This document shows, piece by piece, positions 699 to 54,166 of a stretch of 64,000 nucleotides of DNA (positions are counted from its first letter, which is position 1; each line of letters starts with the position of its first letter). The notes beneath the pieces are model-generated. The model saw nothing but the letters and a program-made list of their open reading frames with translations. It had not been told where the DNA came from and ran no database searches. The stretch covers positions 1 through 64,000 of IMG/VR virus record IMGVR_UViG_3300032116_000004. One strand, written 5' to 3'. Made by a program: the position numbers and the translations under genes.

Positions 699-993
699 TC
701 TCGGCTGTGCAATTAAGGCACACGCTACGGAGATTACGCAGTTCAGAGTTGTTGAGATTACCATCTACATGATATACTAGAGTCTGAGACTGGACTTTGG
801 CGCGGAATCCACAGCGGTCACAGATCATTTTTTTCTTGTATCCTGCCTGTTTCCATCTGGGTTCTGTTGGTTTTTGCCGACGATCTTTCCTGATGCAGTT
901 GTCGCAACGACTACGATAGTAGATCTTATCGCCACGATAGCAATTCACGGCAGATGGTCGTTTGTTGCAGGCTTTGCACAGGGGTCTTGACAT
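646..993 (-). CDS. small zinc-binding HNH-family endonuclease-like protein
   Basis: CxxC pairs plus HVDGNLNNSELRNLRSVCLNC HNH-like core; TAAATA motif 5 nt before the ATG. Confidence 0.7.
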   Translation of the reverse strand: MSRPLCKACNKRPSAVNCYRGDKIYYRSRCDNCIRKDRRQKPTEPRWKQAGYKKKMICDRCGFRAKVQSQTLVYHVDGNLNNSELRNLRSVCLNCTAEIMREDLPWRRGDLEEDR

Positions 994-998
994 GCAGA

Positions 999-1004
999 TA
1001 TTTA
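999..1004 (-). promoter_or_regulatory. late promoter-like TAAATA
   Basis: TATTTA on + strand, 5 nt upstream of minus-strand ATG 993; resembles the T4 late promoter TATAAATA. Confidence 0.6.
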
Positions 1005-1056
1005 AGCAAAACCTTAGGTAAGGGCAAGGTTAGATGGTGGTTTTGGTGTGTGCCGC

Positions 1057-1062
1057 TAAATA
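1057..1062 (+). promoter_or_regulatory. late promoter-like TAAATA for tail sheath
   Basis: TAAATA followed by AAGGA RBS and ATG 1091. Confidence 0.65.
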
Positions 1063-1090
1063 TCAATAGCACTTTTAAAGGAACAGACAC

Positions 1091-4000
1091 ATGGCACTAC
1101 TTAGCCCAGGCGTAGAAGTTACGATCATAGATGAATCCAACTATCTACCAGCTCCTACAAATTCAGTACCATTTATCTTGATAGCCACAGCGCAAAACAA
1201 GATCAGTGGTAGCGGTGTTGGCGTGGCTGCCGGCACCACAGAGGTCAACGCAAATCGAGTTTATTTAATCTCTAGCCAAAGAGATTTGGTCAACACATTT
1301 GGTAACCCATTCTTCTACAAAACCACAGCAGGCACACCAATCAATGGTTATGAACTTAACGAATACGGTCTGCTCGCAGCCTATTCTGTTCTAGGCATTT
1401 CCAATCGTGCATACGTCCAGCGTGCCAACATTGACTTGAGCGAACTCACAGCCAGTTTGACACGCCCCACAGGTGCACCCAACAACGGTGACTATTGGTT
1501 AGATACATCGGCCACTGTCTGGGGTATTTCTGAGTGGAGTTTCACTACCAACACATTTACCAACAAGACACCCATAGTGATCACATCAGCAGATGACTTG
1601 ATAGATCCATTGGACACTACCACTGCTCCTTTGGACAGCATCGGTAACATCGGTGACTATGCTGTGGTAGCCGTGAATGCCAACAACTATACCTATTTCA
1701 AATCTCCAGGTAACACTGTCAGTGATCCAGTGGTTGCTGCCAATACCTGGGTGTTAGTGGGGTCAGATGATTGGAAAAACTCATGGCCCTCAGTGATAGG
1801 AACCCAAACCAATCCCACATTGACCAATGCACAAAGCATTTACCTCAATGATCAGTTGGTTACTATCGCTGGAACCACGGTCACTGCCATGGCCTCGGCA
1901 ATCAATGCAGCCAACGTTCCTGGCATCAGTGCCAAGAATGTCAGTGGCAAGTTGGAAATCTACATCGATTCCAACGGATCCAATGATGGATCCACTGATG
2001 ATGGCAACGGTATCCTTGACATAGCCAACGGCACAGGAACTCTGTTGACCGATCTAGGAATCACACCACGCATCTACTATGCACCTGTGCTACAACAGAG
2101 TCCAAACTACACAGTTCCACGCTGGAGGACCACTGACACTGAGCCACATCCAACTGGTTCGGTATGGAACAAGACCAATACAGTAAACCAAGGTGCGGAT
2201 CTCGCAGTGAAGAAATATGATTCCACATTGGGACTGTTTGTGCAACAGAGTTGTCCACTTTATGCCAACGATCAGAGCGCAAACAAGGCTCTAGATCCGG
2301 CTGGTGGTGGTCGCAACATCACAGCAGGTTCGACCTATGCTCAATATGATGTGGACGAAGACTTCACATTCACTATCAAGATCCTTGAGCGTCTGGCCAG
2401 CGGTAACACAATCATCATTGGTGACGACACATCACCAACATTTGTCAACGGCGAACAGTTCACTATCTCCTGGAGCGTGAAAAACAGTGATACACTGACC
2501 ACCGCGGTCACAGCCACGCTGGGCGGAACCACAGCGGCAGATTTTGTCACAGCATTTTTGGCCGCTATACCATCCGGTGCTCCAGTCACAGCAGGCGTGA
2601 CATCAGATGGCGCCATCCAGATACAGCACACCCAAGGTGGTAGCATCGTGCTTGAAGACACATCCGGCACACCCGTGGCAGATGCAGGTATCAATACATC
2701 AGTCACTGGAGTGCGAGCAGGTGTGAGCAATCAGTTGATCCTATCTAACTGGGTAGGTGCACCCACATTCACATACACTGCCAGCGACGTGGCACCTAGC
2801 CAAGATCCTGCTGATGGACGCTTGTGGTATTATTCTGCCACAGATCAAGTTGACATCATGATCAATAGTGGCAATGCCTGGGTTGGATATCGCACACTCA
2901 GCAATGATGTGCGCGGTTACAATTTGACACAGACAGATCCCGCTGGACCAATCATTTCTGTCACAGCACCCACTGTGCAAAGTGACGATACTCCACTGGT
3001 CTATGGTGATCTCTGGATCGACACCAGCGATCTTGAACTGTATCCAGTGATCAAGCGTTGGCAATCAGTAGACGGTGCAGATCAATGGGTATTGATCGAC
3101 AACACCGACCAGACCACCGAAAATGGTGTGCTGTTCGCTGACTTCCGTTGGGCTACCAACGGTGACACAGATCCTATCACTGCTCCAATTCCAACCATAA
3201 CCAGTTTGCTGGCCAGCTCGTATCTGGATCCAGATGCACCTGAGTATACATTGTATCCTGCAGGCATGTTGGCATTCAACCTGCGTCGTTCAGGATTCAA
3301 CGTCAAGAGCTTCCAGGTAGATTACTTCAATGCCACTGACTATCCTGATTTCACAGGCACAGTCACTGATGCATGGGTCACTGCCAGCGGATTGAAAAAC
3401 GATGGATCACCTTACATGGGTCGCAAAGCAGTGCGGAACATGGTGGTGCAGGCCATGAAATCATCGATAGATGGCAATCAAGATCTGCGCGAAGAACAAC
3501 GCCAGTTCAATTTGATCGCCACACCCAACTATCCAGAATTGATAGTGAATATGATAGCACTCAACAATGAGCGCAACAACACAGCGTTTGTAGTTGGTGA
3601 CACACCAATGCGCTTGCCTGACACAGCCGACGCTATCACTGCATGGGCGACCAATGCTGGTGGTGCTGGTTTAGACGGAGAAGATGGACTGGTCACAGCT
3701 GATGCGTATCTTGGCACGTTCTATCCATCATGCCAAACCACAGATTTGACTGGTGGCACAGTGGTGCAACCGCCCAGCCATATGATGTTGCGCACTATCC
3801 TGCGTAGCGACGAAGTTTCGTTCCCATGGTTGGCACCTGCCGGCACACGCCGCGGTGTGGTTGACAATGCGTTTTCGTTGGGATATGTCAATGCCCAGAC
3901 CGGACAGTTTATCTCAACAGCGATCCGTCAAAGCATACGTGATACCTTGTATGAAAACAAGATCAACCCGATCACGTTCATACCTGGCACGGGCATAACC

Positions 4001-4384: not shown

Positions 4385-4401
4385 CGGTATCGCTAGTGCA
4401 G

Positions 4402-4430
4402 AAAAATGGGGCTTTGGCCCCATTTTTTTT
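4402..4430 (+). terminator. rho-independent terminator after tail sheath
   Basis: AAAAATGGGGC-TTTG-GCCCCATTTTTTTT hairpin plus T-run. Confidence 0.85.
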
Positions 4431-4444
4431 GATCTCATCTCAGA

Positions 4445-4450
4445 TAAATA
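4445..4450 (+). promoter_or_regulatory. late promoter-like TAAATA for tail tube
   Basis: TAAATA then AGGAG RBS and ATG 4478. Confidence 0.65.
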
Positions 4451-4477
4451 ATTGCAATAAGGATTCAGGAGACCAGT

Positions 4478-5095
4478 ATGTCTATCGCATCATTGAACAG
4501 AATGACAGTGCCGTTGGCAAGTGATCAGTCAAGCCCAACCCAGGGTTTGCTGATGCCCAAACTCAAGTATCGCTTCAGAGTGGTGTTTGAGAATCTTGGC
4601 GTAAGCACACCAAGAACTGAACTCACCAAACAGGTGATCAGTTTCACACGCCCTACAATCAACTTTCCAGAGATTGAAGTGCCGGTATATAACAGCACCA
4701 TCTATCTCGCAGGCAAATACAATTGGGAAGCTGTCACATGTGAATTGCGTGACGATGCCGGTGGCAACGTTTCTAAACTGGTTGGCGAACAACTGCAGAA
4801 GCAGTTGGATTTCGTAGAGCAGGCTTCAGCCGCTTCAGGTATCGACTACAAATTCACCACACGCTGTGAAATACTGGACGGTGGTAATGGTGCGTTTGCG
4901 CCCAACGTGCTTGAAACTTGGGAACTGTATGGTTGCTACTTGAGCACAGTGAACTACAACGATTTGAACTACGGTGAGAGTGCCGCAGTCACAGTTTCCA
5001 TGACCTTGCGTTATGACAATGCCATCCAGACACCGATTGGTTCTGGTGTTGGTGCCACAGTAGGTAGAACACTGGGCGACGTAGTAACCGGCTAA
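4478..5095 (+). CDS. tail tube protein (gp19-like)
   Basis: Follows sheath; PKLKYRFRV, YLAGK..W, WELYGCY, L.YDNA tube-type motifs; 205 aa. Confidence 0.85.
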   Translation: MSIASLNRMTVPLASDQSSPTQGLLMPKLKYRFRVVFENLGVSTPRTELTKQVISFTRPTINFPEIEVPVYNSTIYLAGKYNWEAVTCELRDDAGGNVSKLVGEQLQKQLDFVEQASAASGIDYKFTTRCEILDGGNGAFAPNVLETWELYGCYLSTVNYNDLNYGESAAVTVSMTLRYDNAIQTPIGSGVGATVGRTLGDVVTG

Positions 5096-5101
5096 TCAAT
5101 C

Positions 5102-7157: not shown

Positions 7158-7171
7158 GCGGTAAATACCGC

Positions 7172-7654
7172 ATGACGAGAAAATTAGAAGAACTGTTTGA
7201 TCTGCCTCGCAAAGAGGATGAATCCATAGACGATCAAACTCCCTCTGAACCTGCCCTGCCTGTATTGCCCGAAACTCTGGCCACTCTTGACAAGATCGAG
7301 CAAGCATTGCCCGCTGTGCGAGGCCTGGAAGCATCAGACGAAGAAATGGACGAATTGGCCGGCAAGGCACGAGAAAGTTTTGACGATCTCATGGATCTGG
7401 GCATGCAGGTAGACAGCCGCTATGCATCAGAGATATTTTCCGTGGCCAGCACCATGCTGGGTCACGCTATCACGGCCAAAACAGCCAAGATGAACAAAAA
7501 ACTCAAGATGATACAGTTACAGATGCAGAAAGCCAAACTGGATCGCGAGTCCAACGACGGAGACATACCCGTCACAGGCACAGGGCATGTGCTGGATCGC
7601 AACGAAATGCTGGAACGCCTTGTGCGCCGCGAACAACCAAAGAAGCCAGAATAG
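7172..7654 (+). CDS. hypothetical helical protein (possible small terminase-like)
   Basis: Helical, acidic-to-basic 160 aa with DRNEML near the C-terminus; TAAATA 4 nt before ATG; function uncertain. Confidence 0.55.
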   Translation: MTRKLEELFDLPRKEDESIDDQTPSEPALPVLPETLATLDKIEQALPAVRGLEASDEEMDELAGKARESFDDLMDLGMQVDSRYASEIFSVASTMLGHAITAKTAKMNKKLKMIQLQMQKAKLDRESNDGDIPVTGTGHVLDRNEMLERLVRREQPKKPE

Positions 7655-7679
7655 GCTAAATATGATATAGGGGATTGAT

Positions 7680-8285: not shown

Positions 8286-8295
8286 GGAAAACAAA

Positions 8296-10571: not shown

Positions 10572-10586
10572 TAAGGAAAAACAACA

Positions 10587-10865: not shown

Positions 10866-10874
10866 GGAGCAATC

Positions 10875-12282: not shown

Positions 12283-12322
12283 CCACTTTGTTGCGCTACC
12301 AGCCCTAGCTAAATAGTATATT

Positions 12323-13945
12323 ATGGCCTATCCAAATCCAGCTAACGTAGCACCGTGGTATCTACGTAACATAACGCAGGCCCTGGAGCTGGACGAGGCC
12401 ACCGGCAACGTATTTGTCCGCACCAACGCTGTGCTAGTTGGCAATGTGTCAGTGGGCAATATAAGCATTGGCGCACTGGGTAATATCGATCTCACAGGCA
12501 ACACCATGCCCATATCGGGCAATGTCACTGTTTTCCAGGGCACCACACCTTGGGTGATCTCAGGCAACACCAATGTCGCTATAACGTCGGGCAATGTGGG
12601 CATAACCGGAAACATCGCGGGTATCACTGCCAACGTCACTGTGGTTGATGGTGGTGGAAGCATAACCATAGATGGCAATGTGGGCATCACTGGCACGGCC
12701 AATGTGGTGCTGGCTGATGACGCCAATGTAGTGATATCTGGGTTTGGCGGAGCCACTGCCGATGCGTTTGGGCGTCTGCGTGTGTCTGAACCTGTTAGCC
12801 TGTTTGAAACTCAGGCTCGCTACTACGATCATGGCCAGTTTGCTAACTCCATATCTGGCACTGGCAACGTGGTATATGTAGCCGCTCAGAGTTCCTATCA
12901 GCTCAACGTGGGCACAGCGTCGGGCGATTCAGTGCTGAGAGAAACGCTGAAGCCATTTCCTTACCAGCCTGGCAAGAGCCAACTCACACTGAACACATTT
13001 TGTTTTAACACACCAAAGACAAATCTCCGCCAGCGTGTGGGCTTGTTTGATGCCAACGACGGTGTGTATTTTGAAAACGATGGATCCTACAACTACATGG
13101 TCATACGTTCAGGATCCACTGGAGTGGAAGAGCGTATCAGACAAGATGCCTGGAATGTCGATCAACTCAATGGCACAGGACCTGTGACCAATCCGTCTGG
13201 TATCACGCTGTATCCTGATCGAACACAGATCTTTTTTGCTGATGTGGAGTGGCTGGGCGTGGGCTCAGTGCGTGTGGGCTTTGTCATCAACGGTGCGTAT
13301 ATTATCTGTCATTCATTTCCTCATGCCAATCAACCGGGCAACACCAAGGTCTACATGACCACGGCCACCTTGCCCATACGCTATGAAATAACCAACACTG
13401 GCGCTGTCGCCGGCACCAGCATGATGACACAGATCTGTAGCACAGTGATCTCTGAAGGTGGATTCCAACTGAGTGGATCAGGCAATCCCAGAGCCGCCAG
13501 TCATGCCATAGGCACTCCGGTTCGCTTGCCCAATGATCAGACTTTTAAACCCGTTATCGCTATCCGACTCAAGAGCACCAATCTCAATGCCGTGGTTATA
13601 CCCATAAACTACAGCCTGGTACCTGTGGCTGCCAGCATATTCCAGTTCCGAATCTATAAAAAAGCCATCACATCAGGTGGCTCATGGACGGATTCAGCTG
13701 TAGACAGTTCAGTGCAATACAACCTCGCTCCCACAGCCTTGGTGTCAGGCGACATCGCTGAACAGTCATTCATAAACTCAACCAACCAGAGCACAGGTTC
13801 TCCCACGCAAGAAACATTTACTTTTGAATATCAGCTGGAGCGAGAGCCTTTTACTGGCACACCATACGAGTATGTGATTACCATGGCCACCACCGGCACC
13901 AATCAAGACGTCTATGCCAGTGTGGAATGGCAAGAAATAACATAA
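12323..13945 (+). CDS. putative virion structural protein with GN(V/I) repeat stalk and globular C-terminal domain
   Basis: Repeated GNV/GNI units, then DAFGRLRVS, YQPGKS, WLGVG.VR.GF, LPIRYEI; TAAATA 7 nt before ATG. Confidence 0.6.
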   Translation: MAYPNPANVAPWYLRNITQALELDEATGNVFVRTNAVLVGNVSVGNISIGALGNIDLTGNTMPISGNVTVFQGTTPWVISGNTNVAITSGNVGITGNIAGITANVTVVDGGGSITIDGNVGITGTANVVLADDANVVISGFGGATADAFGRLRVSEPVSLFETQARYYDHGQFANSISGTGNVVYVAAQSSYQLNVGTASGDSVLRETLKPFPYQPGKSQLTLNTFCFNTPKTNLRQRVGLFDANDGVYFENDGSYNYMVIRSGSTGVEERIRQDAWNVDQLNGTGPVTNPSGITLYPDRTQIFFADVEWLGVGSVRVGFVINGAYIICHSFPHANQPGNTKVYMTTATLPIRYEITNTGAVAGTSMMTQICSTVISEGGFQLSGSGNPRAASHAIGTPVRLPNDQTFKPVIAIRLKSTNLNAVVIPINYSLVPVAASIFQFRIYKKAITSGGSWTDSAVDSSVQYNLAPTALVSGDIAEQSFINSTNQSTGSPTQETFTFEYQLEREPFTGTPYEYVITMATTGTNQDVYASVEWQEIT

Positions 13946-13956
13946 AGGATATCAAG

Positions 13957-14397: not shown

Positions 14398-14927
14398 GTT
14401 CGTATCTGTTCTTCTTTGAGGCCCAGATACAGATGCCACGAAGGATGCCGCACCCCTCGATAAGTGCTCTTCACTGAATCTACCAACTTCCAGTAGTTAG
14501 GCTTGTAAGGAGTTTTGTTTGGCCTCCACACCTTGTTGCCTTTGTTGGAGTTGCAGGTCTTGCAACAGGTCACGCAGTTTTCCCAAGAAGTGATGCCACC
14601 TTGTGCTCTGGGCAACACATGGTCTATGGTTAGATGTCTTGCGCCCAAGGTGTCATTGCAATATTGGCAAGTAAACAGATCACGCAGATAGAGATTCTGG
14701 CGGCTGAAACGCATACCACCATTCTTACCAAATCCTTTCTTTGTGACAGCCACAGCAGGCACACGCATTTCCAATTTGGCACTGCGCACAGTCCAATCGT
14801 CATACCATTCTAGCACTTGGATCTTGTCCAAGAAGAACAGTTTGATAGCAGTCTGCCAATCTATGGTTGACAGCGGCAAGTAGTTTACTGGTTGATAGTC
14901 TGGTGCTAATACTAACGTGTCGCTCAT
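14391..14927 (-). CDS. HNH endonuclease (McrA-like)
   Basis: LRD.FTCQYC, TIDHVLPRAQGG..SWENCVTCC..CNSNKG. Confidence 0.9.
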   Translation of the reverse strand: MSDTLVLAPDYQPVNYLPLSTIDWQTAIKLFFLDKIQVLEWYDDWTVRSAKLEMRVPAVAVTKKGFGKNGGMRFSRQNLYLRDLFTCQYCNDTLGARHLTIDHVLPRAQGGITSWENCVTCCKTCNSNKGNKVWRPNKTPYKPNYWKLVDSVKSTYRGVRHPSWHLYLGLKEEQIRTY

Positions 14928-14932
14928 AATGA

Positions 14933-14960
14933 TATTTATCGGCGTATATTTTGGTAAGTA
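14933..14960. promoter_or_regulatory. back-to-back late promoter-like motifs (TAAATA minus, TAAGTA plus)
   Basis: TATTTA 14933-14938, 5 nt from minus ATG 14927; TAAGTA 14955-14960, 5 nt from ATG 14966. Confidence 0.55.
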
Positions 14961-14965
14961 ACAGT

Positions 14966-16531
14966 ATGTCCAAGAGTCTCGAAGGCGTCCTTATCAAGCA
15001 ACCGCATCGCAGGATGCCTTACACTGAACAGCAGGTCGATGAGTTCGTGAAATGTGCGGATCCTGAATCGGGTCCTACTTACTTCATGAGTCATTTTTTC
15101 TACATACAACATCCCTTGTATGGTAAGATGCTGTATCAGCCCTATGAATTCCAAGAACGCTTGATCGAGACCTATCACAATTATAGATTCTCTATATCCA
15201 TGATGCCTAGGCAAACGGGCAAATCTACTTCGGCAGCAGGCTATCTGCTGTGGTATGCCATGTTCGTTCCGGATTCGACCATCTTGGTGGCCGCCCACAA
15301 GTATCTGGGCGCACAGGAGATCATGCAACGTGTTCGTTATGCCTATGAAGCCTGTCCAGATCATATCAGGGCAGGGGTTGTGAGTTACAACAAAGGATCT
15401 ATAGAATTTGACAATGGATCACGTATCGTCAGCCAGACCACAACAGAAAACACCGGTCGTGGTATGTCAATAACCTTGCTCTACTGCGACGAGTTTGCGT
15501 TCGTGCGCCCGGGCATAGCCAAAGAGTTTTGGACTTCCATCACACCCACGCTGTCAACTGGTGGTAAAGCCATTGTTACGTCCACGCCCAATTCAGACGA
15601 AGATCAGTTTGCGCTGATCTGGAAACTGGCCAACAAACTGGAAGATGACTACGGCAATCCCACAGAAATAGGGCAGAATGGTTTCCGGGCTTTCCGTGCA
15701 TATTGGCGCGAACATCCTGACCGTGACGATGCCTGGGCTTCACAGCAAAAAGCCATACTGGGCGAAGAACGTTTCCGCCGAGAGATGGACTGCGAATTCA
15801 TCATCGACGACGAGACCTTGATCGCTCCTACTAAACTGATCGATCTTGTGGCCACTGAACCCATCTACAAGACTGGACAGGTGCGCTGGTTCAAACCCAT
15901 AAACAAAGAGCATATCTATGTAGTAGCCCTGGACCCTAGCCTGGGCACCGGGGGAGACCCGTCGGCCATCCAGGTGTTTGATGCCAACACCACAGAACAG
16001 GTAGCCGAATGGCGGCACAACCGGACCGACATTCCCAGCCAGGTTCGCATCTTGGCCGATGTGTGCAAACACATTAATGAAACACTGCGTGATTCCAAAA
16101 GCATCTATTTTACAGTGGAGAACAATACCATTGGCGAAGCTGCCTTGATATCCATAGCAGAATATGGCGAAGAAAACATCCAGGGCTATTTCCTCAGCGA
16201 TCCCAGCAGTGGCGGCGGACGCAGATATCGCAAAGGATTCAACACCACCAACAAGCCCAAACTGGCGGCCTGCGCCAAACTGAAAAATCTCATTGAAACT
16301 GGTAGGATGCGCATTAATTCTGCCAGCCTCATCACTGAACTCAAGAACTTCATAGCGCACGGTGCCAGTTACGCGGCCAAAGTAGGCGAAACCGATGATC
16401 TTGTCATGGCCACGCTGTTGGCTGTGCGCATGATGCAACTGCTCCAGAGTTATCATCAAGAACTGGACACACAACTGCGTGATCATTCGGATACCATCAT
16501 AGAACCCATGCCCTTCATAGCCGTGTTCTAA
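14966..16531 (+). CDS. terminase large subunit (gp17-like)
   Basis: PRQTGKS Walker A, LLYCDEFA Walker B, TSTPN, ALDPSLG and DDLVMA nuclease motifs. Confidence 0.95.
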   Translation: MSKSLEGVLIKQPHRRMPYTEQQVDEFVKCADPESGPTYFMSHFFYIQHPLYGKMLYQPYEFQERLIETYHNYRFSISMMPRQTGKSTSAAGYLLWYAMFVPDSTILVAAHKYLGAQEIMQRVRYAYEACPDHIRAGVVSYNKGSIEFDNGSRIVSQTTTENTGRGMSITLLYCDEFAFVRPGIAKEFWTSITPTLSTGGKAIVTSTPNSDEDQFALIWKLANKLEDDYGNPTEIGQNGFRAFRAYWREHPDRDDAWASQQKAILGEERFRREMDCEFIIDDETLIAPTKLIDLVATEPIYKTGQVRWFKPINKEHIYVVALDPSLGTGGDPSAIQVFDANTTEQVAEWRHNRTDIPSQVRILADVCKHINETLRDSKSIYFTVENNTIGEAALISIAEYGEENIQGYFLSDPSSGGGRRYRKGFNTTNKPKLAACAKLKNLIETGRMRINSASLITELKNFIAHGASYAAKVGETDDLVMATLLAVRMMQLLQSYHQELDTQLRDHSDTIIEPMPFIAVF

Positions 16532-16544
16532 TAAATATAATACC

Positions 16545-18056
16545 ATGAGCGATAAAAACACACCCGCACGCCAACTATATGACCTGCTCGTAGCGCAGGA
16601 TTTTGAACCCGAAGCCCTGGACAGCCAAGGCAAACCCGCCGCTGATCCTGCTGATGCAGACATCATCAGTTTTGACTATGCCACTCCTGAAAAGGACTAT
16701 GGCACTGTGGTAGTGGCCCTGGACGGTGAAAACAACCTGGACATGTATTTTGGAGACAACATGGCACGAGCCATGGAAGGCAATGATCGTGGCGACTGGT
16801 ATGATTTCCTGTATCTGGTTCGCATGTTCGCCAAACGCAATCTGCTCACGTTTAACGTAAAAAATCTCAGCAGACTCAAATACAACATGAAGACCATGGC
16901 TGCCGTCAAAGAAAGCCTGTTTGAAGGCTACTATGGCAACCGCAAGATTTCCTACTCAGATCAACCCAATCGCGCACGGCTTGTGATCAAACACAACAAA
17001 ACCTTGGGTGAAGGTGATGCACGTTTCCGCCATATCGAAAGCCTCTATGTAGAGAATGCCGAAGGTGAACGTTTCCGTGTGCCCAGCCGCAGCCTCACAC
17101 ATGGTCGCATGCTGGCACGACACGTGGCCGAAGGTGGCACACCCTACGATGCCTTTGGCATCCACATCACAGAGATCGTGGATGAGATGAAAACGCTCAG
17201 CAACTTCGTGCGTGCGGCACGGCATCGTGACTATACCGGTGAAGCCGCGCACATGGTAGAAGCTGCCATACGCCACTACGCTGATCTCAAAGCCAAGGCC
17301 AAGAAGATGATAGGTCGCAGAGGCTATCACGAAGAACGTGACAGTTTTGATCCTGCTGAGATCACAGAGATAGACGAAGCAGTGGAGACCATACGCGAAT
17401 TGTTCGTGAAACAGACTTTGGATCCTAGAGTAGAACAGGCCTTGCCTGTGCTGGCACGACTGCAAGAACAGGATCTCCCCGAAGCCGACGAATTTGAATC
17501 ATGGACTGACCGTGTGATGGAAGGCACCTGGGCCATACCAGAGACTCCTGAGCAGGTAAAAAAATTACAGATCTTGATGAGCAAAGATCTCATCGTGGGA
17601 CCTGATGCTTCCAATGCCACAGAACAACTGTATGACATCATTGGCGACGACGAACTGTTTGACATCTTGGAAGACATGGCCATGACCAACCCTGACGCCA
17701 ATGTGTGGGACGATCCTCGTGTGCAAAAAAGATTGGAACAGTTGGGCATACCAGGTATGGATGCCATAGACCTTGATGCAGTCAAAGAAGGACAGGTAAA
17801 AAGATTGGCCATGGGCGACATCTCTGCAGAACCAGATGCTCAAGGACCCTATGATGTGATACGCAGGCGTGATGGTATCGAATCCGGCCTACATCAATAT
17901 GGCAATCGTGAGCAGGCCCGGAAACACGCACAGAATCTCAAGAACAAATACCCCAGCATGGAAGTGGGCATCAGACCCGCTGGTCAACGAACCGAATATA
18001 TAGGCATCAAAGAAAGCCAAGGGCTAGATAGATTATTGAATCTAGCTCGGTCATGA
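16545..18056 (+). CDS. hypothetical protein (probable head-associated)
   Basis: 503-aa ORF; TAAATA 7 nt before ATG; internal LFEG/VMEG/VKEG/IKES motifs. Confidence 0.7.
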   Translation: MSDKNTPARQLYDLLVAQDFEPEALDSQGKPAADPADADIISFDYATPEKDYGTVVVALDGENNLDMYFGDNMARAMEGNDRGDWYDFLYLVRMFAKRNLLTFNVKNLSRLKYNMKTMAAVKESLFEGYYGNRKISYSDQPNRARLVIKHNKTLGEGDARFRHIESLYVENAEGERFRVPSRSLTHGRMLARHVAEGGTPYDAFGIHITEIVDEMKTLSNFVRAARHRDYTGEAAHMVEAAIRHYADLKAKAKKMIGRRGYHEERDSFDPAEITEIDEAVETIRELFVKQTLDPRVEQALPVLARLQEQDLPEADEFESWTDRVMEGTWAIPETPEQVKKLQILMSKDLIVGPDASNATEQLYDIIGDDELFDILEDMAMTNPDANVWDDPRVQKRLEQLGIPGMDAIDLDAVKEGQVKRLAMGDISAEPDAQGPYDVIRRRDGIESGLHQYGNREQARKHAQNLKNKYPSMEVGIRPAGQRTEYIGIKESQGLDRLLNLARS

Positions 18057-18616: not shown

Positions 18617-19158
18617 AATGTCACGCTGGCACGTGTGCCGATTCCAGGCAATACCCTATGAGGTTTGAGATCGGTATTGACATTGATATAACCTTTGTTA
18701 TTGGCCAACTCTAACTTGTATGGCGGATCCACATGCAAGAATTCGATACCGTGACAGGGATCCTGTTTTGAAGACCAAATGTCAACATAGACTTGATAGG
18801 TAACTATGATGTCTGGTGAATCTGAATGTGTCTGGCAGGCAAAGCCCGGCAAGTCTAGCCAAAATTTCACTATCATGAGATTGAGATCCAATCCAGAGAT
18901 CTGATTCAATGAAGGTATGATATCCAACCCTATCTGTTGTAATCGGGCATGATCCGGGCCCGGTTGCAACATCAGTCTGCGATGGGGTCGTGAAACTGCG
19001 AATTGATTTTGTTCGTTTATCACAATGTCCTGCATCCATGACAATGTTTCGGAGCAAAAACACTCATCCACAAGCCAACAGTTCGGTGCCACTGATTGCA
19101 ATTGACAGACTTGATCATATATCTTGACTTGTTGTGTAGATGTGTTATACTGTGTCAT
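18598..19158 (-). CDS. 2OG-Fe(II) oxygenase superfamily protein
   Basis: FWLD.PGF...HSD, NKGY, PHRV, RAS (HxD..H..R); start set at ATG 19158, 7 nt after TAAATA. Confidence 0.7.
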   Translation of the reverse strand: MTQYNTSTQQVKIYDQVCQLQSVAPNCWLVDECFCSETLSWMQDIVINEQNQFAVSRPHRRLMLQPGPDHARLQQIGLDIIPSLNQISGLDLNLMIVKFWLDLPGFACQTHSDSPDIIVTYQVYVDIWSSKQDPCHGIEFLHVDPPYKLELANNKGYINVNTDLKPHRVLPGIGTRASVTFQYNLV

Positions 19159-19207
19159 ATGCCGATATTTACATGCCAAAATCAATGTTCAAAAGAAAAA
19201 TCGCCTT

Positions 19208-32013: not shown

Positions 32014-32798
32014 TTGCGATCATAATCATCGGGTAGGCTATGTCCCAAGGCCTTGCGTTTAGAGCCTTTCATGTGATCCATGTATAGGCCCAAGCGACTG
32101 GCGATAAAAGGATGCCCTGGGCCTTTGCCCGGCAGTTCGGGACTGAGATTGTGGAAAGAGGTCTGTCGTTGCGTCTGGAAGTCTTTGCGGATCACGTCAA
32201 ATACAAAACTGTCATGATATTCGCGCAGGCGGAAAAGATCTCCTGTGACATAAAGATCATGCCAACGGTCCATGAAACTGAGCAAATCGGGATGGCGCCG
32301 ATTATAGGCCACCCATCCGCATTCGCTGTGATATTTTTCCCTGCGTCCCAGATAACAGGCCATTGCTGAATCTTCGCATATGGTGCTCAAGAAATTTTCC
32401 GGAACGTCCTGGAAAGTCACTGTGTCTGCATCTAACCATATCACCCAGTCGCTGTCTAGAGTGCGGCAAGCATGGATCACAGCAAAGACCTTGTGGCTGA
32501 ATCTCACTGCATCCCACTTGAAAGCATTGTCTTTGAACGGTACTCCGGTGTCTTTGGCCACCAACCCATTGGCCATGGGATCGTTGCCCCAGCGATTTTT
32601 GAAATTTACCAAATCTGGTGACTGTGCCAACAGATCCAGGATCTTCACACGATCGCTGGGCGATCTGGGCTGGCAATTTTCTGCATATACTATCAGTTCC
32701 ACATCTCCGGGCCAATGGCGATCAAAAGCGTCGATCATGCGCTGGCCATATTGTTTGAGACCCGGGGCATGGAACGTGGTAATTACTGTGTATTTCAT
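31959..32798 (-). CDS. GT-A fold glycosyltransferase
   Basis: VITTF, WDAVRFSHKV, WLDAD, YLGR...SECGW, E.HDS.VFD, DHMKG; TAAATA 7 nt before ATG 32798. Confidence 0.75.
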   Translation of the reverse strand: MKYTVITTFHAPGLKQYGQRMIDAFDRHWPGDVELIVYAENCQPRSPSDRVKILDLLAQSPDLVNFKNRWGNDPMANGLVAKDTGVPFKDNAFKWDAVRFSHKVFAVIHACRTLDSDWVIWLDADTVTFQDVPENFLSTICEDSAMACYLGRREKYHSECGWVAYNRRHPDLLSFMDRWHDLYVTGDLFRLREYHDSFVFDVIRKDFQTQRQTSFHNLSPELPGKGPGHPFIASRLGLYMDHMKGSKRKALGHSLPDDYDRNQGLNSSVGYWQGIFGRR

Positions 32799-32811
32799 CG
32801 CAGGATATTTA

Positions 32812-34986: not shown

Positions 34987-34989
34987 TGG

Positions 34990-36182: not shown

Positions 36183-36233
36183 GTTTACCCGGATCGCCAT
36201 CAAATAGTCTAGCTCCTAGGCGATCCGTTTCAC

Positions 36234-36266
36234 AGAGGCACCCTTTAAAAAGGTGCCTCTTTTTTT
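36234..36266 (+). terminator. rho-independent terminator
   Basis: AGAGGCACC...GGTGCCTCT plus T-run. Confidence 0.8.
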
Positions 36267-36285
36267 GACCTCGCTAAGTATTCAC

Positions 36286-37458
36286 ATGGGCAAAGACAAC
36301 AAAATATTTTGCACGGCACCATTTACTACTTTACGAATAGAATCTTATAGTGCCTCAATACCTGGCAAATATGATCAGTATGGAGTGATTTTCAAACCGG
36401 GATGTGTGTATGATCCACAGGGTCCTATATCCAGTCTTGACGAATATCTTCAAGGGCAGGAAATGTCCTGGCACAGAAATAACTTGTTGCAAGGATTGCA
36501 ACCACATCCTGGTTGTCATAGATGTTGGAAATCTGAACAAATTGGTCTAGACAGCACTAGAAAACAGTTGTTGAAAAAACCCTATGCCAGTGACCAGATG
36601 GGTATCAAATTGTTAGATGTTTTTTTTGGCAATGTGTGTAACATGGCCTGTTTTATGTGTGATCCTGAATGGTCCAGCAAACATGCCGAAGAAAGTTACC
36701 AATTGGGATTCATAAAGCAAAGAATCGATGTAAAAGACAACACAGACACAGTGTTGGAAACTATAGATCTGCTACCTGATCTCGAGCAGGTCAGTTTCAT
36801 AGGCGGGGAATTTTTCTTATTCAAAAACAACGTCAAAATTTGCAACAAGATCATTGAAAAAAATCTCGAAGCCAGGATCGTAACCAATGCCAGCGTATTG
36901 ACTGATGAACTTTGGAAAAAGCTTACAGAGATCAAAGCAATTGAAATGCAAATCAGCATAGATGCTATAGAAGAAACCTATGCTCTTATGCGTTACCCTT
37001 ACACCTGGGATACCTTGATCGGCAATTACCAAAAACTGAAACAACTATCAAACATCAAACTCAATTTTCATGTGGTCACACAGGTGCTTAATATTCAAAA
37101 TCTGCATGCCACTTTGGACTGGGCCAATCGAGAACGCACACCAATTTCTTTGCACAATCTATCGCCCGGATGCTGGTCTTGGGACATACTTACCGTTTCT
37201 GAAAAAATCGAACTGAAACAGTATCTACAGGATTGCAATCAAAGATTTAGATTGATATCCAAGCAGACGCAGTGGATACAAGATCTGATTGATGGGTTAG
37301 ACAAGGTTAAATTCAGTCCGCAATGGCGGCAACAGTTTGTGGATAGATTTTCCAAACTTATGAAACATAGGAAAGTTGATATACCGCAAATCCAAAAACA
37401 TTTGGGTATTTTCCGTAGCCTGTTTGACGAGGTCCTAACGGCAATGGATGCACATTAA
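36286..37458 (+). CDS. radical SAM protein
   Basis: FCTAPF, PGC, C.RC, CNMACFMC...WSS, GGEFF, VTNA, SIDA...MRYP; TAAGTA 5 nt before ATG 36286. Confidence 0.85.
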   Translation: MGKDNKIFCTAPFTTLRIESYSASIPGKYDQYGVIFKPGCVYDPQGPISSLDEYLQGQEMSWHRNNLLQGLQPHPGCHRCWKSEQIGLDSTRKQLLKKPYASDQMGIKLLDVFFGNVCNMACFMCDPEWSSKHAEESYQLGFIKQRIDVKDNTDTVLETIDLLPDLEQVSFIGGEFFLFKNNVKICNKIIEKNLEARIVTNASVLTDELWKKLTEIKAIEMQISIDAIEETYALMRYPYTWDTLIGNYQKLKQLSNIKLNFHVVTQVLNIQNLHATLDWANRERTPISLHNLSPGCWSWDILTVSEKIELKQYLQDCNQRFRLISKQTQWIQDLIDGLDKVKFSPQWRQQFVDRFSKLMKHRKVDIPQIQKHLGIFRSLFDEVLTAMDAH

Positions 37459-37465
37459 TCAAATT

Positions 37466-37496: not shown

Positions 37497-37502
37497 ATCA
37501 CA

Positions 37503-39570: not shown

Positions 39571-39578
39571 TGGATACT

Positions 39579-42115: not shown

Positions 42116-42136
42116 AAATATCGTTAGGAAAACCTT

Positions 42137-49026: not shown

Positions 49027-49032
49027 GATGAT

Positions 49033-49503: not shown

Positions 49504-50556
49504 TTACCACTCCGTTATATAATAGATGCCGCTGTCCCCGCGCTCAGGCCAATAATCCTCCCGGCCCCCTGATCGATGTATATCACTACAAACGCAGTGT
49601 ATTCCGGCATCCCAAAAATATCTAGATTGAAATTCTACCAAATGCGGAGTGATACCTAGAGATTCAAAATATTGAAAAGCCATTTCATCGTAAGCGCCAC
49701 ATATGATATTTTTTTCGTCTACTACCAACATATTGACTTCAAAAACAGTTTCTTGCGGATTGCCTAACCATTGTTCTGCCACGGCCATTATATCTGCGTT
49801 GAAATGCCCGTAGTCTACTCCGGGTAGATACCACTTGTCGGCTATACCAACGTGTTGGAGATTTTTATATGTGGTGTCTGGCAGATGGAACACAGACCAT
49901 CCTGGAAAACTTGAGTCATAGACCTTTCTATAATGAGACGTAAAAATATGCCCTGGCCTAATCGGACAAAAAACTCCGTCGTTATGATCTCCAGTGCCAC
50001 TGAGATGCACTCTATAATCTTTGGCTAATTCCTGTGCTACCAGATACGTGTATTTTTTTGATTCTGGTATATTTGGCTGATAATCTATCAGTATATCTTT
50101 TCCGGCCCGCACCACGCTGGCAAAAATCATCCAGGCCCATGGTTCTGGTGTAGCACGGTCAATGACATGTATTTTTTGTCCTGCTTGGCGATAATCATCT
50201 ACAGCACGTTGATAGGGATTTACTTCGGACGTGTATTGAGGCATGAGATGCAAAGTATCTCCTAGTGTCAGTGCTATGTCGCATGGACTTACCGGTGGTT
50301 TAAGCAAATGATCATGTTCGTCTAAAAAGTCGTCTATACGATCGAATTGAGGCCTGACTACTGTGACACCTAATTTTTCCAATGTGTCTGTTAGATTGTC
50401 AAAATCTTTGTTGGTAATTTCAGTGATTTTTGCAAAAATATCGTGGGATTTGTTGCCAAGATGCTGGTAAAAATCTGCAGGATAAGTGCCACCTACCCAT
50501 ACTTCTTTCAATGGTTGCCATTGGCTGTGACTTGAAACTTTACGTTGACTTATCAT
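49504..50556 (-). CDS. amidinotransferase family protein (glycine/inosamine-phosphate amidinotransferase-like)
   Basis: S...WQPLKEVWVG, GV.VVRP, HNDG, VNMLVVDE, C-terminal WDAGIHC (catalytic Cys); TAAATA 7 nt before ATG. Confidence 0.8.
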   Translation of the reverse strand: MISQRKVSSHSQWQPLKEVWVGGTYPADFYQHLGNKSHDIFAKITEITNKDFDNLTDTLEKLGVTVVRPQFDRIDDFLDEHDHLLKPPVSPCDIALTLGDTLHLMPQYTSEVNPYQRAVDDYRQAGQKIHVIDRATPEPWAWMIFASVVRAGKDILIDYQPNIPESKKYTYLVAQELAKDYRVHLSGTGDHNDGVFCPIRPGHIFTSHYRKVYDSSFPGWSVFHLPDTTYKNLQHVGIADKWYLPGVDYGHFNADIMAVAEQWLGNPQETVFEVNMLVVDEKNIICGAYDEMAFQYFESLGITPHLVEFQSRYFWDAGIHCVCSDIHRSGGREDYWPERGDSGIYYITEW

Positions 50557-50610
50557 ATAAGGATATTTACAGATACGTAAAATCTACTAAATAATTTAAA
50601 GGTTCGGATC

Positions 50611-50856
50611 ATGCACAAAAAGACCCGCAGTATATTAGAAGAACTCGATGCTATGTATATCGAGCGTGATCGCAGGCACGTGATAGAAAATCGTGCTTCA
50701 AACATCATTGCCGGCGCCATCAGGCTCATGGAGCAGATCGATGCCACTTATGATCCAGAGCAGGCAGAAAATCTCCAGCGCAAGCTACTCAACGCCATAC
50801 GCATGCGGGATGCGTCAAAATTCACGAGGACCGTGAGACGCACCGATGAAAGTTAA
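50611..50856 (+). CDS. hypothetical protein
   Basis: TAAATA at 50588; 81-aa helical ORF. Confidence 0.7.
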   Translation: MHKKTRSILEELDAMYIERDRRHVIENRASNIIAGAIRLMEQIDATYDPEQAENLQRKLLNAIRMRDASKFTRTVRRTDES

Positions 50857-53400: not shown

Positions 53401-53424
53401 TAGCCCCCGATTTCACCATTTCGG

Positions 53425-53432
53425 TATAAATA
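53425..53432 (+). promoter_or_regulatory. full T4-type late promoter TATAAATA
   Basis: Exact consensus; AGGAG RBS before ATG 53472. Confidence 0.75.
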
Positions 53433-53471
53433 AAAGTAGGCCCGCTAAGGCCACTTATTAGGAGATTTAAA

Positions 53472-53855
53472 ATGGCACAATTTACACGCACCAATGGTGA
53501 TTCGCAACCAGTATTCGCGCTAGACACACAGAATGGTCCAGTCGCACCTTCCACTTCGTTGGCCGGTGTTCCTGTCCAGCCTCAAGGTCCAAAACTTGAC
53601 TTCTTCCGTGCAGTTGCTAACAACAGCATCAACGGCGAAGGCGGTGTAGCAGAATACGTTGCAAACGTGATCCAGGCTATCCAGCAAACATCCACAGTTG
53701 CTATGTATCAAGTTGACGGCGTAGCATTGTCAGTGGCTGTATATCCTACAGGCGCATTCGCAAACGCTGCCGCTTTCTTGTCAGCAGCCAACATCACCTA
53801 CACAGGTTTCCAGTTAGACTCAGCCACAAACGCTGGTTTCAAACTCACAACCTAA
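53472..53855 (+). CDS. small, probably abundant structural protein
   Basis: Monocistronic with perfect late promoter, strong RBS and terminator; Ala/Val/Thr-rich. Confidence 0.7.
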   Translation: MAQFTRTNGDSQPVFALDTQNGPVAPSTSLAGVPVQPQGPKLDFFRAVANNSINGEGGVAEYVANVIQAIQQTSTVAMYQVDGVALSVAVYPTGAFANAAAFLSAANITYTGFQLDSATNAGFKLTT

Positions 53856-53876
53856 TCTGTAGTTTTGGTATAGAAG

Positions 53877-53906
53877 AAACCCTAGTTCTTTAACTAGGGT
53901 TTTTTT
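53877..53906 (+). terminator. rho-independent terminator
   Basis: AAACCCTAGTT-CTTT-AACTAGGGTTT plus T-run. Confidence 0.85.
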
Positions 53907-53923
53907 GTGGCTTAAATACCCGC

Positions 53924-54166
53924 ATGGCAGATCAACGATACGTATATGAAAGTCCTGATGGTGGACACACTATCTATCGCAGGCATCCTGGCAAACTGGA
54001 TAGAGAATTGGTATCCATCGATCAGGAAACCCAGGACAAACTGGCTGCCTTGAAAGAAGACAAACTGTGGGGCGATATACGGCGCAGAGCCCAGCAAGAT
54101 CCTGCCCTACAGCAGATGTTGGATCAACTACGGATCTACTACAGTCTCAAGTATGCAAAAGATTGA
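53924..54166 (+). CDS. hypothetical protein
   Basis: YESPDGG.TIY.R motif; TAAATA 5 nt before ATG. Confidence 0.7.
   Translation: MADQRYVYESPDGGHTIYRRHPGKLDRELVSIDQETQDKLAALKEDKLWGDIRRRAQQDPALQQMLDQLRIYYSLKYAKD

What the first reader, a model, noticed from the sequence alone, without database searches (positions are those of the whole stretch)
993..53924. Late-promoter motif 4-7 nt before start codons: widespread leaderless late mRNAs
Seen: TAA(A/G)TA precedes ATG by 4-7 nt, leaving no room for a Shine-Dalgarno, at 993(-) (5 nt), 7172 (4), 12323 (7), 14927(-) (5), 14966 (5, TAAGTA), 16545 (7), 19158(-) (7), 32798(-) (7), 36286 (5, TAAGTA), 50556(-) (7) and 53924 (5). Expected high-copy genes (sheath, tube, 53472) instead have the motif about 25-40 nt upstream plus an SD. 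Established: T4 late transcription starts a few nt after TATAAATA. Inference: a two-tier late programme, with leaderless mRNAs for low-copy enzymes such as terminase and leadered mRNAs for abundant proteins. The motif also fixes several start codons that differ from the longest-ORF calls.
Basis: partly seen in the sequence, partly recalled or inferred. Interest (0 to 1): 0.62.

Follow-up and report, generated by a model that had tools for sequence, protein, structure and literature searches.

The report
Late promoters butted against start codons
In this uncultured 316-kb freshwater jumbo phage, a T4-like late-promoter motif sits only 4-8 bases before the ATG of about 30 genes that have no ribosome-binding site, which points to leaderless late mRNAs, a layout conserved in its wild relatives but absent from T4 and from cultured cousins.

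Summary
All 11 listed sites have TAA(A/G)TA 4-7 nt before an ATG. In the window there are 10 TAAATA-N4-7-ATG matches against 2.2 expected. Across the whole 315,778-bp phage the spacing peaks sharply at 5 nt (22 against 3.3, p 9e-12), with lesser peaks at 7-8 nt.

About 30 genes ("class L") have this layout and almost never a Shine-Dalgarno (1/30 against 55% of other genes). About 45 more ("class S", including sheath and tube) carry the same motif 10-60 nt upstream, mostly with a Shine-Dalgarno.

The genome encodes a gp55-like late sigma factor. Class L motifs lie in short divergent spacers and directly after terminators. The base before the ATG is a pyrimidine in 27/30, as expected at a transcription start.

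The layout recurs in a 331-kb relative, where 16 of 21 orthologues keep it, and in dozens of environmental relatives. T4, Atu_ph07 and Phosso lack it; there the orthologous promoter has a leader with a Shine-Dalgarno.

No 5'-end data exist, so "leaderless" and "late" remain inferences. The split by protein abundance is only partly supported. I rate this a new variant of a known kind.

The parts
991..1004 (-). Class L site: TAAATA, 5 nt, ATG of a 115-aa ORF. It is divergent from the sheath gene across a 97-nt spacer.
   Evidence: No SD. My SD-weighted model preferred GTG 948, so this start is less certain.
7162..7174 (+). Class L site: TAAATA, 4 nt, ATG of a 160-aa ORF.
   Evidence: The G001 orthologue is also class L, spacing 5.
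12310..12325 (+). Class L site: TAAATA, 7 nt, ATG of a 540-aa virion structural protein.
14925..14938 (-). Class L site: TAAATA, 5 nt, ATG of an HNH endonuclease (178 aa).
   Evidence: It shares a 38-nt divergent spacer with TerL. 10 of 15 relatives keep a motif at spacing 5-9.
14955..14968 (+). Class L site: TAAGTA, 5 nt, ATG of the large terminase (521 aa).
   Evidence: 42 of 77 environmental TerL relatives have TAARTA 4-9 nt before the aligned ATG, 30 of them at 5 nt. Public gene calls give the same 521-aa product.
16532..16547 (+). Class L site: TAAATA, 7 nt, ATG of a 503-aa virion structural protein.
   Evidence: 63 of 65 relatives (30-74% aa identity) keep the motif at 4-7 nt. In Atu_ph07, Phosso, BF and PA5oct the orthologous motif lies 17-26 nt upstream, with an SD in three of them.
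19156..19171 (-). Class L site: TAAATA, 7 nt, ATG of a 186-aa ORF, divergent from its neighbour.
   Evidence: Two of four relatives keep spacing 7.
32796..32811 (-). Class L site: TAAATA, 7 nt, ATG of a 279-aa ORF.
   Evidence: The G001 orthologue is class L, spacing 6.
36234..36266 (+). Terminator-like hairpin with a U7 run, ending 19 nt before the ATG at 36286.
   Evidence: -15.6 kcal/mol, z -3.9. Also.
36275..36288 (+). Class L site: TAAGTA, 5 nt, ATG of a radical-SAM protein (390 aa).
   Evidence: It sits directly after the terminator-like hairpin.
50554..50569 (-). Class L site: TAAATA, 7 nt, ATG of a 350-aa ORF.
   Evidence: The 54-nt divergent spacer also holds a class S motif for ORF 50611. 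The G001 orthologue is class L.
53873..53906 (+). Terminator-like hairpin with a U7 run, ending 17 nt before the ATG at 53924.
   Evidence: -17.7 kcal/mol, z -5.2.
53913..53926 (+). Class L site: TAAATA, 5 nt, ATG of an 80-aa ORF.
1057..1093 (+). Class S (leadered) site: TAAATA, 28 nt containing AGGA, ATG of the tail sheath.
4445..4480 (+). Class S site: TAAATA, 27 nt containing AGGAG, ATG of the tail tube protein.
53425..53474 (+). Class S site: full TATAAATA, 39 nt containing AGGAG, ATG of a 127-aa ORF with no family match.
50588..50613 (+). Class S site: TAAATA, 17 nt containing AGGT, ATG of an 81-aa ORF, back to back with the class L site at 50554-50569.

Best explanation
TAA(A/G)TA is the -10-type late promoter of this phage. 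It is read by host RNA polymerase carrying the phage's gp55-like sigma factor.

At about 45 genes the promoter lies 10-60 nt upstream and the short leader carries a Shine-Dalgarno. At about 30 genes (roughly 8% of genes; 11 in this window) it lies 4-8 nt before the ATG, most often 5 nt. Transcription then starts at the A of the ATG, or at most 2-3 nt before it. These mRNAs have no room for a Shine-Dalgarno and would be translated as leaderless mRNAs, by ribosome and initiator tRNA binding to a 5'-terminal AUG.

Shown:
- the motif, its spacing and the lack of a Shine-Dalgarno;
- conservation of the layout in relatives;
- the presence of the sigma gene.

Inferred:
- promoter activity;
- late timing;
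- the exact start site;
- the leaderless mode of translation.
For: 1. Spacing. TAARTA-N5-ATG occurs 22 times against 3.3 expected (p 9e-12), with lesser peaks at 7-8 nt. The peak is specific to ATG and to TAAATA/TAAGTA among TAANNN hexamers.

2. Same element in both classes. 74 of 168 motifs lie within 40 nt upstream of a start (binomial p 7e-72). Classes L and S share flank preferences: G at -2, almost no G in the two bases after the motif, and TAAATA:TAAGTA near 5:1 against 60:40 at other copies.

3. Sigma factor. A gp55-like gene sits at G000:296505-297431. It matches phrog_12791 at E 4e-78 and phrog_234 at E 2.5e-23, and T4 gp55 by tblastn at E 5e-6. An ATAAATA late promoter and a gp55-like sigma were already predicted for related Rak2-like phages (PMC5259590).

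4. No ribosome-binding site. SD of 4 nt or more: 1/30 class L against 196/359 other genes (p 7e-9).

5. No room for another promoter. Eight class L genes are divergent from their neighbour; HNH and TerL share a 38-nt spacer. At 36286 and 53924 a strong hairpin with a U7 run ends 17-19 nt before the ATG.

6. Start-site signature. The base before the ATG is a pyrimidine in 27/30 class L genes against 50% of others (p 1e-5). In G001 it is 28/40 against 48% (p 0.011). This also holds at spacing 7-8. It fits the known pyrimidine(-1)/purine(+1) preference at transcription starts.

7. Conservation.
- G001 (TerL 71% aa identity) has 40 class L genes, of which 2 have an SD.
- 16 of 21 orthologues of G000 class L genes are class L there (p 2e-14).
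- TerL keeps the layout in 42 of 77 relatives and the next gene in 63 of 65, in otherwise unalignable upstream DNA.

8. Geometry. T4 late promoters sit about one helical turn upstream of the start site (PMC2988020). A -10 motif 6-7 bp before ORFs is the accepted signature of leaderless genes in Deinococcus (PMC12340547).
Against: - No 5' end has been mapped. The only RNA run holding this phage gave four 151-nt contigs inside genes.
- The host is unknown. A PstS 70-77% identical to Comamonadaceae proteins hints at Betaproteobacteria. From general knowledge, leaderless translation is thought to be inefficient in that group.
- 19 of 30 class L genes follow an upstream same-strand gene by 40 nt or less. 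They could also be translated from longer transcripts.
- The second spacing mode at 7-8 nt and the dip at 6 nt are unexplained.
- No gp45-type clamp was detected, and no gp33 was looked for. The T4 activation mechanism may therefore not apply.
- The class L start codon was required to be ATG by my definition, and a few of the starts are uncertain.
Confidence: 0.65

Rival explanations
1. The hexamer acts at the RNA level as a non-Shine-Dalgarno translation signal, for instance an AU-rich element bound by ribosomal protein S1 or by phage-modified ribosomes. The mRNAs would be leadered or polycistronic and would start further upstream.
For: - 19 of 30 class L genes lie 40 nt or less behind a same-strand gene, so read-through transcripts are plausible.
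- The phage encodes a bS21 ribosomal protein, which sits next to the anti-Shine-Dalgarno.
Against: - The same hexamer, with the same flank preferences, lies 10-60 nt upstream of Shine-Dalgarno-led genes at variable distance. That fits a promoter, not a ribosome site.
- It resembles the T4 late promoter, and a gp55-like sigma is encoded.
- It occurs in 38-54-nt divergent spacers and directly after terminators.
- The pyrimidine at -1 is a transcription-start feature.
- bS21 is also present in PA5oct, Atu_ph07 and Phosso. Atu_ph07 and Phosso show no excess of this layout; PA5oct was too AT-rich to test.
Confidence: 0.12
2. The motif is a real late promoter, but the ORF it abuts is translated mainly from upstream polycistronic transcripts by coupling or re-initiation. 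The promoter would serve the genes downstream.
For: - The gaps to the upstream gene are short in most tandem cases.
- In 4 cases the TAA of the motif is the upstream stop codon.
Against: - It does not explain the sharp, ATG-specific spacing peak.
- It does not explain conservation of a spacing of 8 nt or less across orthologues.
- It does not cover the 8 divergent cases or the 3-4 cases after a terminator, which have no upstream transcript.
- The stop codon has no fixed register with the motif.
Confidence: 0.1
3. The hexamer marks an endoribonuclease cleavage site that trims longer transcripts to leaderless form.
For: None directly. It is AU-rich, like RNase E-type sites, and it would also place a 5' end next to the AUG.
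Against: The promoter-like distribution, the sigma gene and the divergent and post-terminator contexts are explained more simply by initiation.
Confidence: 0.03
4. Chance or base composition: AT-rich hexamers simply accumulate before start codons.
For: The total number of TAARTA copies is what dinucleotide content predicts: 170 against 171.5.
Against: - Shuffles and Markov simulations never reach the observed counts.
- Other A/T hexamers show no peak unless they overlap the motif.
- T4 shows no excess: 32 against 40 control for TAAATA-N{3,9}-ATG.
- Atu_ph07 (17 against 26) and Phosso (4 against 2) show none for TAAATA-N{4,5}-ATG.
- The result replicates in G001.
Confidence: 0.01

Closest known systems
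T4-type late transcription (gp55 sigma, TATAAATA promoter without a -35 element)
   Same: - An AT-rich -10-type motif with the TAAATA core and no conserved upstream element.
- It sits upstream of sheath, tube, portal, baseplate and terminase genes.
- A gp55-family sigma is encoded.
   Different: - Only the 6-nt core is conserved; the leading TA is not, and G is tolerated at position 4.
- The sigma is 308 aa against 185 aa in T4.
- No gp45-type clamp was detected.
- T4 shows no excess of the motif 3-9 nt before ATG (32 against 40 control). About 30-40 genes per genome here have that layout.
Predicted ATAAATA late promoters of Rak2-like, PA5oct-like and Atu_ph07-like jumbo phages
   Same: - The closest cultured relatives by TerL (42-52% aa identity).
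- The CBB paper predicts the same motif and a gp55-like sigma.
- The promoter in front of the gene after TerL is orthologous.
   Different: - In Atu_ph07, Phosso, BF and PA5oct that orthologous motif lies 17-26 nt upstream; the leader holds a Shine-Dalgarno in the first three.
- Genome-wide, Phosso and Atu_ph07 show no excess of TAAATA-N4-5-ATG.
- The leaderless-type layout is confined to the freshwater clade of G000 and G001.
-10 motif adjacent to ORFs as a leaderless-gene signature in Deinococcus-Thermus, and leaderless middle/late mRNAs of Thermus phages such as phiYS40
   Same: A -10-like element a few bp before the start codon, occupying the place of the ribosome-binding site, in a sizeable share of genes. 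In D. radiodurans it is TANNNT, 6-7 bp upstream, in about a third of genes (PMC12340547). The phiYS40 case is from memory; that paper is only cited there and was not readable here.
   Different: - There the promoter is read by the host primary sigma, in a phylum where leaderless translation is normal.
- Here the element is a phage-specific gp55-type late promoter.
- The likely host lineage is proteobacterial (inference).
Single leaderless phage mRNAs of Proteobacteria (lambda cI from pRM)
   Same: A phage mRNA that starts at the AUG and is translated without a Shine-Dalgarno (PMC10491246).
   Different: Those are isolated regulatory cases. Here the layout covers about 8-10% of genes, including terminase and portal.

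Membership tests
T4-type (gp55-dependent) late promoter system | -10-type TATAAATA-like motif with no conserved -35 element, enriched just upstream of genes | tested here: met
   The TAA(A/G)TA core is invariant by search. 74 of 168 copies lie within 40 nt upstream of a start. No conserved position lies further upstream, and the leading TA of T4 is not conserved.
T4-type (gp55-dependent) late promoter system | gp55-family sigma factor encoded by the phage | tested here: met
   G000:296505-297431, 308 aa. Matches: phrog_12791 at E 4e-78, phrog_234 at E 2.5e-23, T4 gp55 at E 5e-6.
T4-type (gp55-dependent) late promoter system | gp45 sliding clamp as activator | tested here: inconclusive
   No hit with T4 gp45 or with Pfam DNA_PPF. 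A divergent clamp could be missed, and the record is about 91% complete.
T4-type (gp55-dependent) late promoter system | gp33 co-activator | not tested
   No reference sequence was fetched. The CBB paper reports none in that relative.
T4-type (gp55-dependent) late promoter system | Motif precedes virion and packaging genes | tested here: met
   Sheath, tube, portal, TerL, baseplate wedge proteins, tail spike and several virion structural proteins.
T4-type (gp55-dependent) late promoter system | Late timing and dependence on the sigma | not testable with these tools
   There is no cultured host and no time-course data.
Leaderless mRNA | Transcription start at, or within a few nt of, the start codon | not testable with these tools
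   The one RNA run gave only internal contigs. The contigs found by exact-protein look-up were long (6.9-268 kb) and extended upstream of the ATG through TerL, so none marks a transcript 5' end.
Leaderless mRNA | -10-like promoter element 5-8 bp before the start codon | tested here: met
   Spacing modes at 5 and 7-8 nt.
Leaderless mRNA | No Shine-Dalgarno | tested here: met
   1/30 against 196/359 in G000; 2/40 in G001.
Leaderless mRNA | AUG start codon | tested here: met
   The model-free spacing peak exists for ATG only, not for GTG or TTG. One possible GTG exception lies near G000:221206 (-).
Leaderless mRNA | Pyrimidine at -1 and purine at +1 at the presumed start | tested here: met
   27/30 (p 1e-5) in G000 and 28/40 (p 0.011) in G001.

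The most novel reading that the evidence does not exclude
A whole clade of freshwater jumbo phages, probably infecting Betaproteobacteria, has turned part of its gp55-driven late programme into truly leaderless mRNAs. It would then rely on a phage-induced change of the translation apparatus, for example its own late-expressed bS21, to translate them efficiently late in infection. This would give terminase, portal and some enzymes a private translation channel that does not depend on Shine-Dalgarno pairing.
Probability: 0.12. Interest if true: 0.85.

Novelty: new variant of a known kind. Interest (0 to 1): 0.6.

Why it matters
T4-type late promoters and leaderless mRNAs are each well known. A phage-specific late promoter fused directly to the start codons of 8-10% of genes has not, as far as my literature searches reach, been described for T4-like or jumbo phages.

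If the transcripts are leaderless, these phages use two translation modes within one temporal class. The host lineage is probably one where leaderless translation is thought to be weak. That raises a testable question: how are terminase and portal made in adequate amounts, and does the phage alter the ribosome?

In practice, the motif is a sharp tool for fixing start codons and operon boundaries in a large group of uncultured jumbo phages. The short promoter-ATG cassettes are easy to test in vitro.

Tried and rejected
- **RNA evidence.** The single RNA run that holds this phage (X20) gave four 151-nt contigs, all inside genes. It shows no starts.
- **Exact-protein look-up.** Only long contigs (6.9-268 kb) that extend upstream of the ATG were found, none usable as a transcript end. 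The look-up did confirm the 521-aa and 503-aa gene calls.
- **PA5oct as comparator.** At 33% GC, TAAATA is too frequent there (109 copies in 50 kb) for a clean spacing test. Its TerL has no adjacent motif. I did not fetch the rest of that genome.
- **Phage translation factors.**
  - There is no IF3_C hit.
  - bS21 is present, but it is also present in PA5oct, Atu_ph07 and Phosso. Atu_ph07 and Phosso do not show the layout, so there is no co-variation.
- **Chen et al. 2022 phages.** The bS21 phages of that paper (31-34% GC, Bacteroidetes hosts) are a different group.
- **Terminator scan.** The consensus scan missed both hairpins. Folding showed them clearly.
- **Stop-codon hypothesis.** The motif's TAA is the upstream stop codon in only 4 of 22 tandem cases, and the register is not fixed.
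- **Extended -10 reading.** G is enriched at -2, but T is not enriched at -3.
- **Motif depletion.** The idea from my first rough estimate was wrong: the total equals the dinucleotide expectation.
- **Other.** The phiYS40 paper could not be read. The window holds no tRNA and no Rfam match.


Full report
**What the window is**

The window is the first 64 kb of a 315,778-bp IMG/VR virus record (G000, CheckV about 91% complete, 47% GC). It is a jumbo myovirus.
- It encodes a 1097-aa sheath, a tube protein, a large terminase (TerL), a portal and a gp23-type capsid protein.
- By TerL, the closest cultured phages are Pseudomonas PA5oct (52% aa), Sinorhizobium Phosso, Agrobacterium Atu_ph07 and the Rak2/CBB/BF group.
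- The DNA occurs in lake, freshwater, 'fungus' and 'algae' metagenomes from 18 studies.
- A phage PstS is 70-77% identical to proteins of Limnohabitans, Acidovorax, Hydrogenophaga and other Comamonadaceae. This hints at a betaproteobacterial host but does not prove one.

**Checking the observation**

Every one of the 11 sites is as described, at the stated spacing. The three leadered counter-examples are also correct.
- In the window, TAAATA-N{4,7}-ATG occurs 10 times against 2.2 +/- 1.6 in shuffles; no shuffle of 100 reached 10.
- In the whole genome, the count of TAARTA-N{d}-ATG is flat at about 3.3 per spacing except at three values: d=5 (22, Poisson 9e-12), d=7 (9) and d=8 (8). Spacings 4 and 6 are not enriched.
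- There is no such peak before GTG or TTG, and none for other A/T hexamers unless they overlap the motif.
- Among TAANNN hexamers 5 nt before an ATG, TAAATA (14) and TAAGTA (8) stand out.

**Two classes of motif-bearing genes**

I built a simple gene model of 389 genes. Of 168 TAARTA copies, 74 lie within 40 nt upstream of a same-strand start. That zone is 2.5% of the sequence.

| | Class L | Class S |
|---|---|---|
| Genes | 30 | 45 |
| Motif position | 3-9 nt before an ATG | 10-60 nt upstream |
| Shine-Dalgarno of 4 nt or more | 1 of 30 | 36 of 45 |

- All 359 genes outside class L together have a Shine-Dalgarno in 196 cases (55%). The class L deficit gives Fisher p 7e-9.
- Both classes share the same flank preferences: G two bases before the motif and almost no G in the two bases after it.
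- Both share a TAAATA:TAAGTA ratio near 5:1. Copies elsewhere in the genome lack these features.
- The two classes therefore look like one kind of element placed at two distances.

**Why it is probably a late promoter**
- The core matches the T4 late promoter TATAAATA. That promoter sits about one helical turn before the start site and has no -35 element (PMC2988020).
G000:296505-297431 encodes a 308-aa protein matching 'sigma factor for late transcription' (phrog_12791, E 4e-78), the T4 gp55 family (phrog_234, E 2.5e-23) and T4 gp55 itself (E 5e-6).
- For the related phage CBB, an ATAAATA late promoter and a gp55-like sigma were already predicted (PMC5259590).
- The motif precedes sheath, tube, portal, TerL, baseplate, tail-spike and other virion genes.
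- A gp45-type clamp was not detected. gp33 was not searched.

**Why the class L transcripts are probably leaderless**
1. *No room for another promoter.* Eight class L genes diverge from their neighbour. The HNH endonuclease and TerL share a 38-nt spacer that holds two back-to-back motifs, each 5 nt from its ATG. At 36286 and 53924 a strong hairpin with a U7 run (-15.6 and -17.7 kcal/mol, z -3.9 and -5.2) ends 17-19 nt before the ATG. Only the hexamer fits in between.
2. *Geometry.* A 5-nt gap puts the A of the ATG where T4-type and bacterial RNA polymerases start. The exact -13 to -6 position of the T4 box is from my memory; the review says only 'about one helical turn'.
3. *Start-site signature.* The base before the ATG is a pyrimidine in 27 of 30 class L genes, against 50% of other genes (p 1e-5). 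This also holds at spacing 7-8 (10 of 11). It fits the known pyrimidine(-1)/purine(+1) rule and suggests the start is the A of the ATG in both spacing modes.
4. *Accepted signature elsewhere.* A -10 motif 6-7 bp before ORFs, in place of the ribosome site, marks leaderless genes in Deinococcus (PMC12340547).

**Comparative evidence**

*The 331,654-bp relative G001* (TerL 71% aa identity; only 88 kb aligns, at 69% nt identity) reproduces everything.
- TAAATA-N4 and -N5-ATG occur 13 and 14 times against a background of 3.4.
- It has 40 class L genes, of which 2 have a Shine-Dalgarno, and 53 class S genes.
- Among 228 reciprocal-best-hit pairs, 16 of the 21 G000 class L genes are class L in G001 (2.3 expected, p 2e-14). 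25 of 33 class S genes stay class S.
- Protein identity in these pairs is 35-72%. The spacing drifts between 3 and 8 nt.

*In 79 environmental TerL loci* (66-88% aa identity), the upstream DNA is otherwise unalignable.
- TerL has TAARTA 4-9 nt before the aligned ATG in 42 of 77 loci, 30 of them at 5 nt.
- The next gene has it at 4-7 nt in 63 of 65 loci.

*Cultured relatives and T4.*
- In Atu_ph07, Phosso, BF and PA5oct the motif before that same orthologous gene lies 17-26 nt upstream. The leader carries a Shine-Dalgarno in the first three.
- Genome-wide, TAAATA-N{4,5}-ATG gives 4 against 2 control in Phosso and 17 against 26 in Atu_ph07. TAAATA-N{3,9}-ATG gives 32 against 40 control in T4. 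None shows an excess.
- The leaders therefore seem to have been lost in one freshwater clade.

**The abundance idea**

*Class L holds:*
- TerL, portal and an HNH endonuclease;
- a gp25-like baseplate protein;
- peptide deformylase, a QueE-like enzyme, a radical-SAM protein and a metallophosphoesterase;
- a 1699-aa protein and many unknowns;
- four or five 'virion structural proteins' of unknown copy number.

*Class S holds:*
- sheath, tube, the large baseplate wedge, a tail spike and a head-closure protein;
- endolysin, PhoH, PstS, Hsp20, DNA ligase, NifU and bS21.

The capsid protein has a strong Shine-Dalgarno and no nearby motif. But class S is not restricted to abundant proteins, so the split is only partial.

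**What is missing**
- No transcription start has been mapped. The single RNA run gave four short internal contigs.
- Late timing, sigma dependence and leaderless translation are inferences.
- 19 of 30 class L genes lie 40 nt or less behind a same-strand gene, so they may also be read from longer transcripts.
- The dip at spacing 6 is unexplained.

**Translation factors**
- The phage encodes bS21 behind a class S motif with AGGAGG.
- Loss of bS21 has been linked to better leaderless translation in E. coli (PMC10491246).
- However, bS21 is also present in PA5oct, Atu_ph07 and Phosso. Atu_ph07 and Phosso do not show the layout, so nothing here ties the two together.
- No IF3 domain was found.

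**Literature**
- Searches found no report of leaderless late mRNAs in T4-like or jumbo phages.
- AR9 leaders are 26-491 nt. phiKZ showed no leaderless transcripts among its mapped early-infection start sites. The PA5oct paper reports only sigma70-like promoters. The cyanophage review mentions only the NATAAATA motif.
- Leaderless middle/late mRNAs of Thermus phage phiYS40 are the nearest viral precedent. I cite that from memory, since the paper was not readable here.

**Verdict**
- The promoter reading is well supported.
- The leaderless reading is the best explanation but is unproven.
- The abundance rule is partly supported.
- This is a new variant of known kinds: a gp55-type late promoter combined with the leaderless-gene signature.

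Noticed in passing
L084:13431-13643 (+) = G000:73431-73643: The phage encodes a ribosomal protein bS21 (Pfam Ribosomal_S21, E 9e-18). It has a TTG start, a TAAATA motif 30 nt upstream and a strong AGGAGG. bS21 is also present in G001, PA5oct, Atu_ph07 and Phosso, but not in BF.
   Followed up: partly
L088:18004-18450 (+) = G000:150004-150450: A peptide deformylase gene (phrog_2890, E 2e-38) is itself a class L gene: TAAATA, 5 nt, ATG.
   Followed up: no
L092:8454-9458 (-) = G000:212454-213458: The phage PstS phosphate-binding protein is 70-77% identical to Comamonadaceae proteins (Limnohabitans, Acidovorax, Hydrogenophaga). This is a host hint. PhoH, Hsp20 and NifU-like genes are also present.
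   Followed up: partly
window 53425-53855: A 127-aa ORF with no PHROG match has the only perfect T4 box (TATAAATA) in front of a gene in the window, plus a strong AGGAG. A terminator-like hairpin follows at 53873-53906. It is probably a very highly expressed small late protein of unknown role.
   Followed up: no
window 1091-4384: The tail sheath is 1097 aa, much longer than the PHROG tail-sheath profiles it also hits (phrog_23 is 496 positions). The best family (phrog_10581) covers it end to end.
   Followed up: no
window 36286-37458, and L002:1836-2984 (= G000:297446-298594): Two paralogous radical-SAM proteins (phrog_14086). The second also has a SPASM domain and lies directly after the gp55-like sigma gene. 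The first is class L, and the G001 orthologue of the second is class L.
   Followed up: no
G000 near 221195-221206 (-): TAAATA, 5 nt, then GTG opens a 120-aa ORF with a hydrophobic, signal-peptide-like N-terminus. It is the one candidate leaderless-type site without an ATG.
   Followed up: no
G000:315495-315510 (+), just after the capsid gene terminator: A perfect TATAAATA, 5 nt, then ATG opens only a 45-aa ORF beginning MIG. The same ATGATTGGC string precedes TerL in several relatives. Its meaning is unknown.
   Followed up: no
79 related loci L004-L082: TAAATA-N3-TTG occurs 28 times against about 5 expected, and TAAATA-N20/21-GTG 22 and 13 times. These are probably conserved orthologous sites, but I did not resolve them.
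   Followed up: no
window 49504-50556 (-) and L094:7749-8804 (+): Two paralogues of an unknown family (phrog_25854). One is class L (spacing 7). The other has the motif 25 nt upstream and no recognisable Shine-Dalgarno.
   Followed up: no
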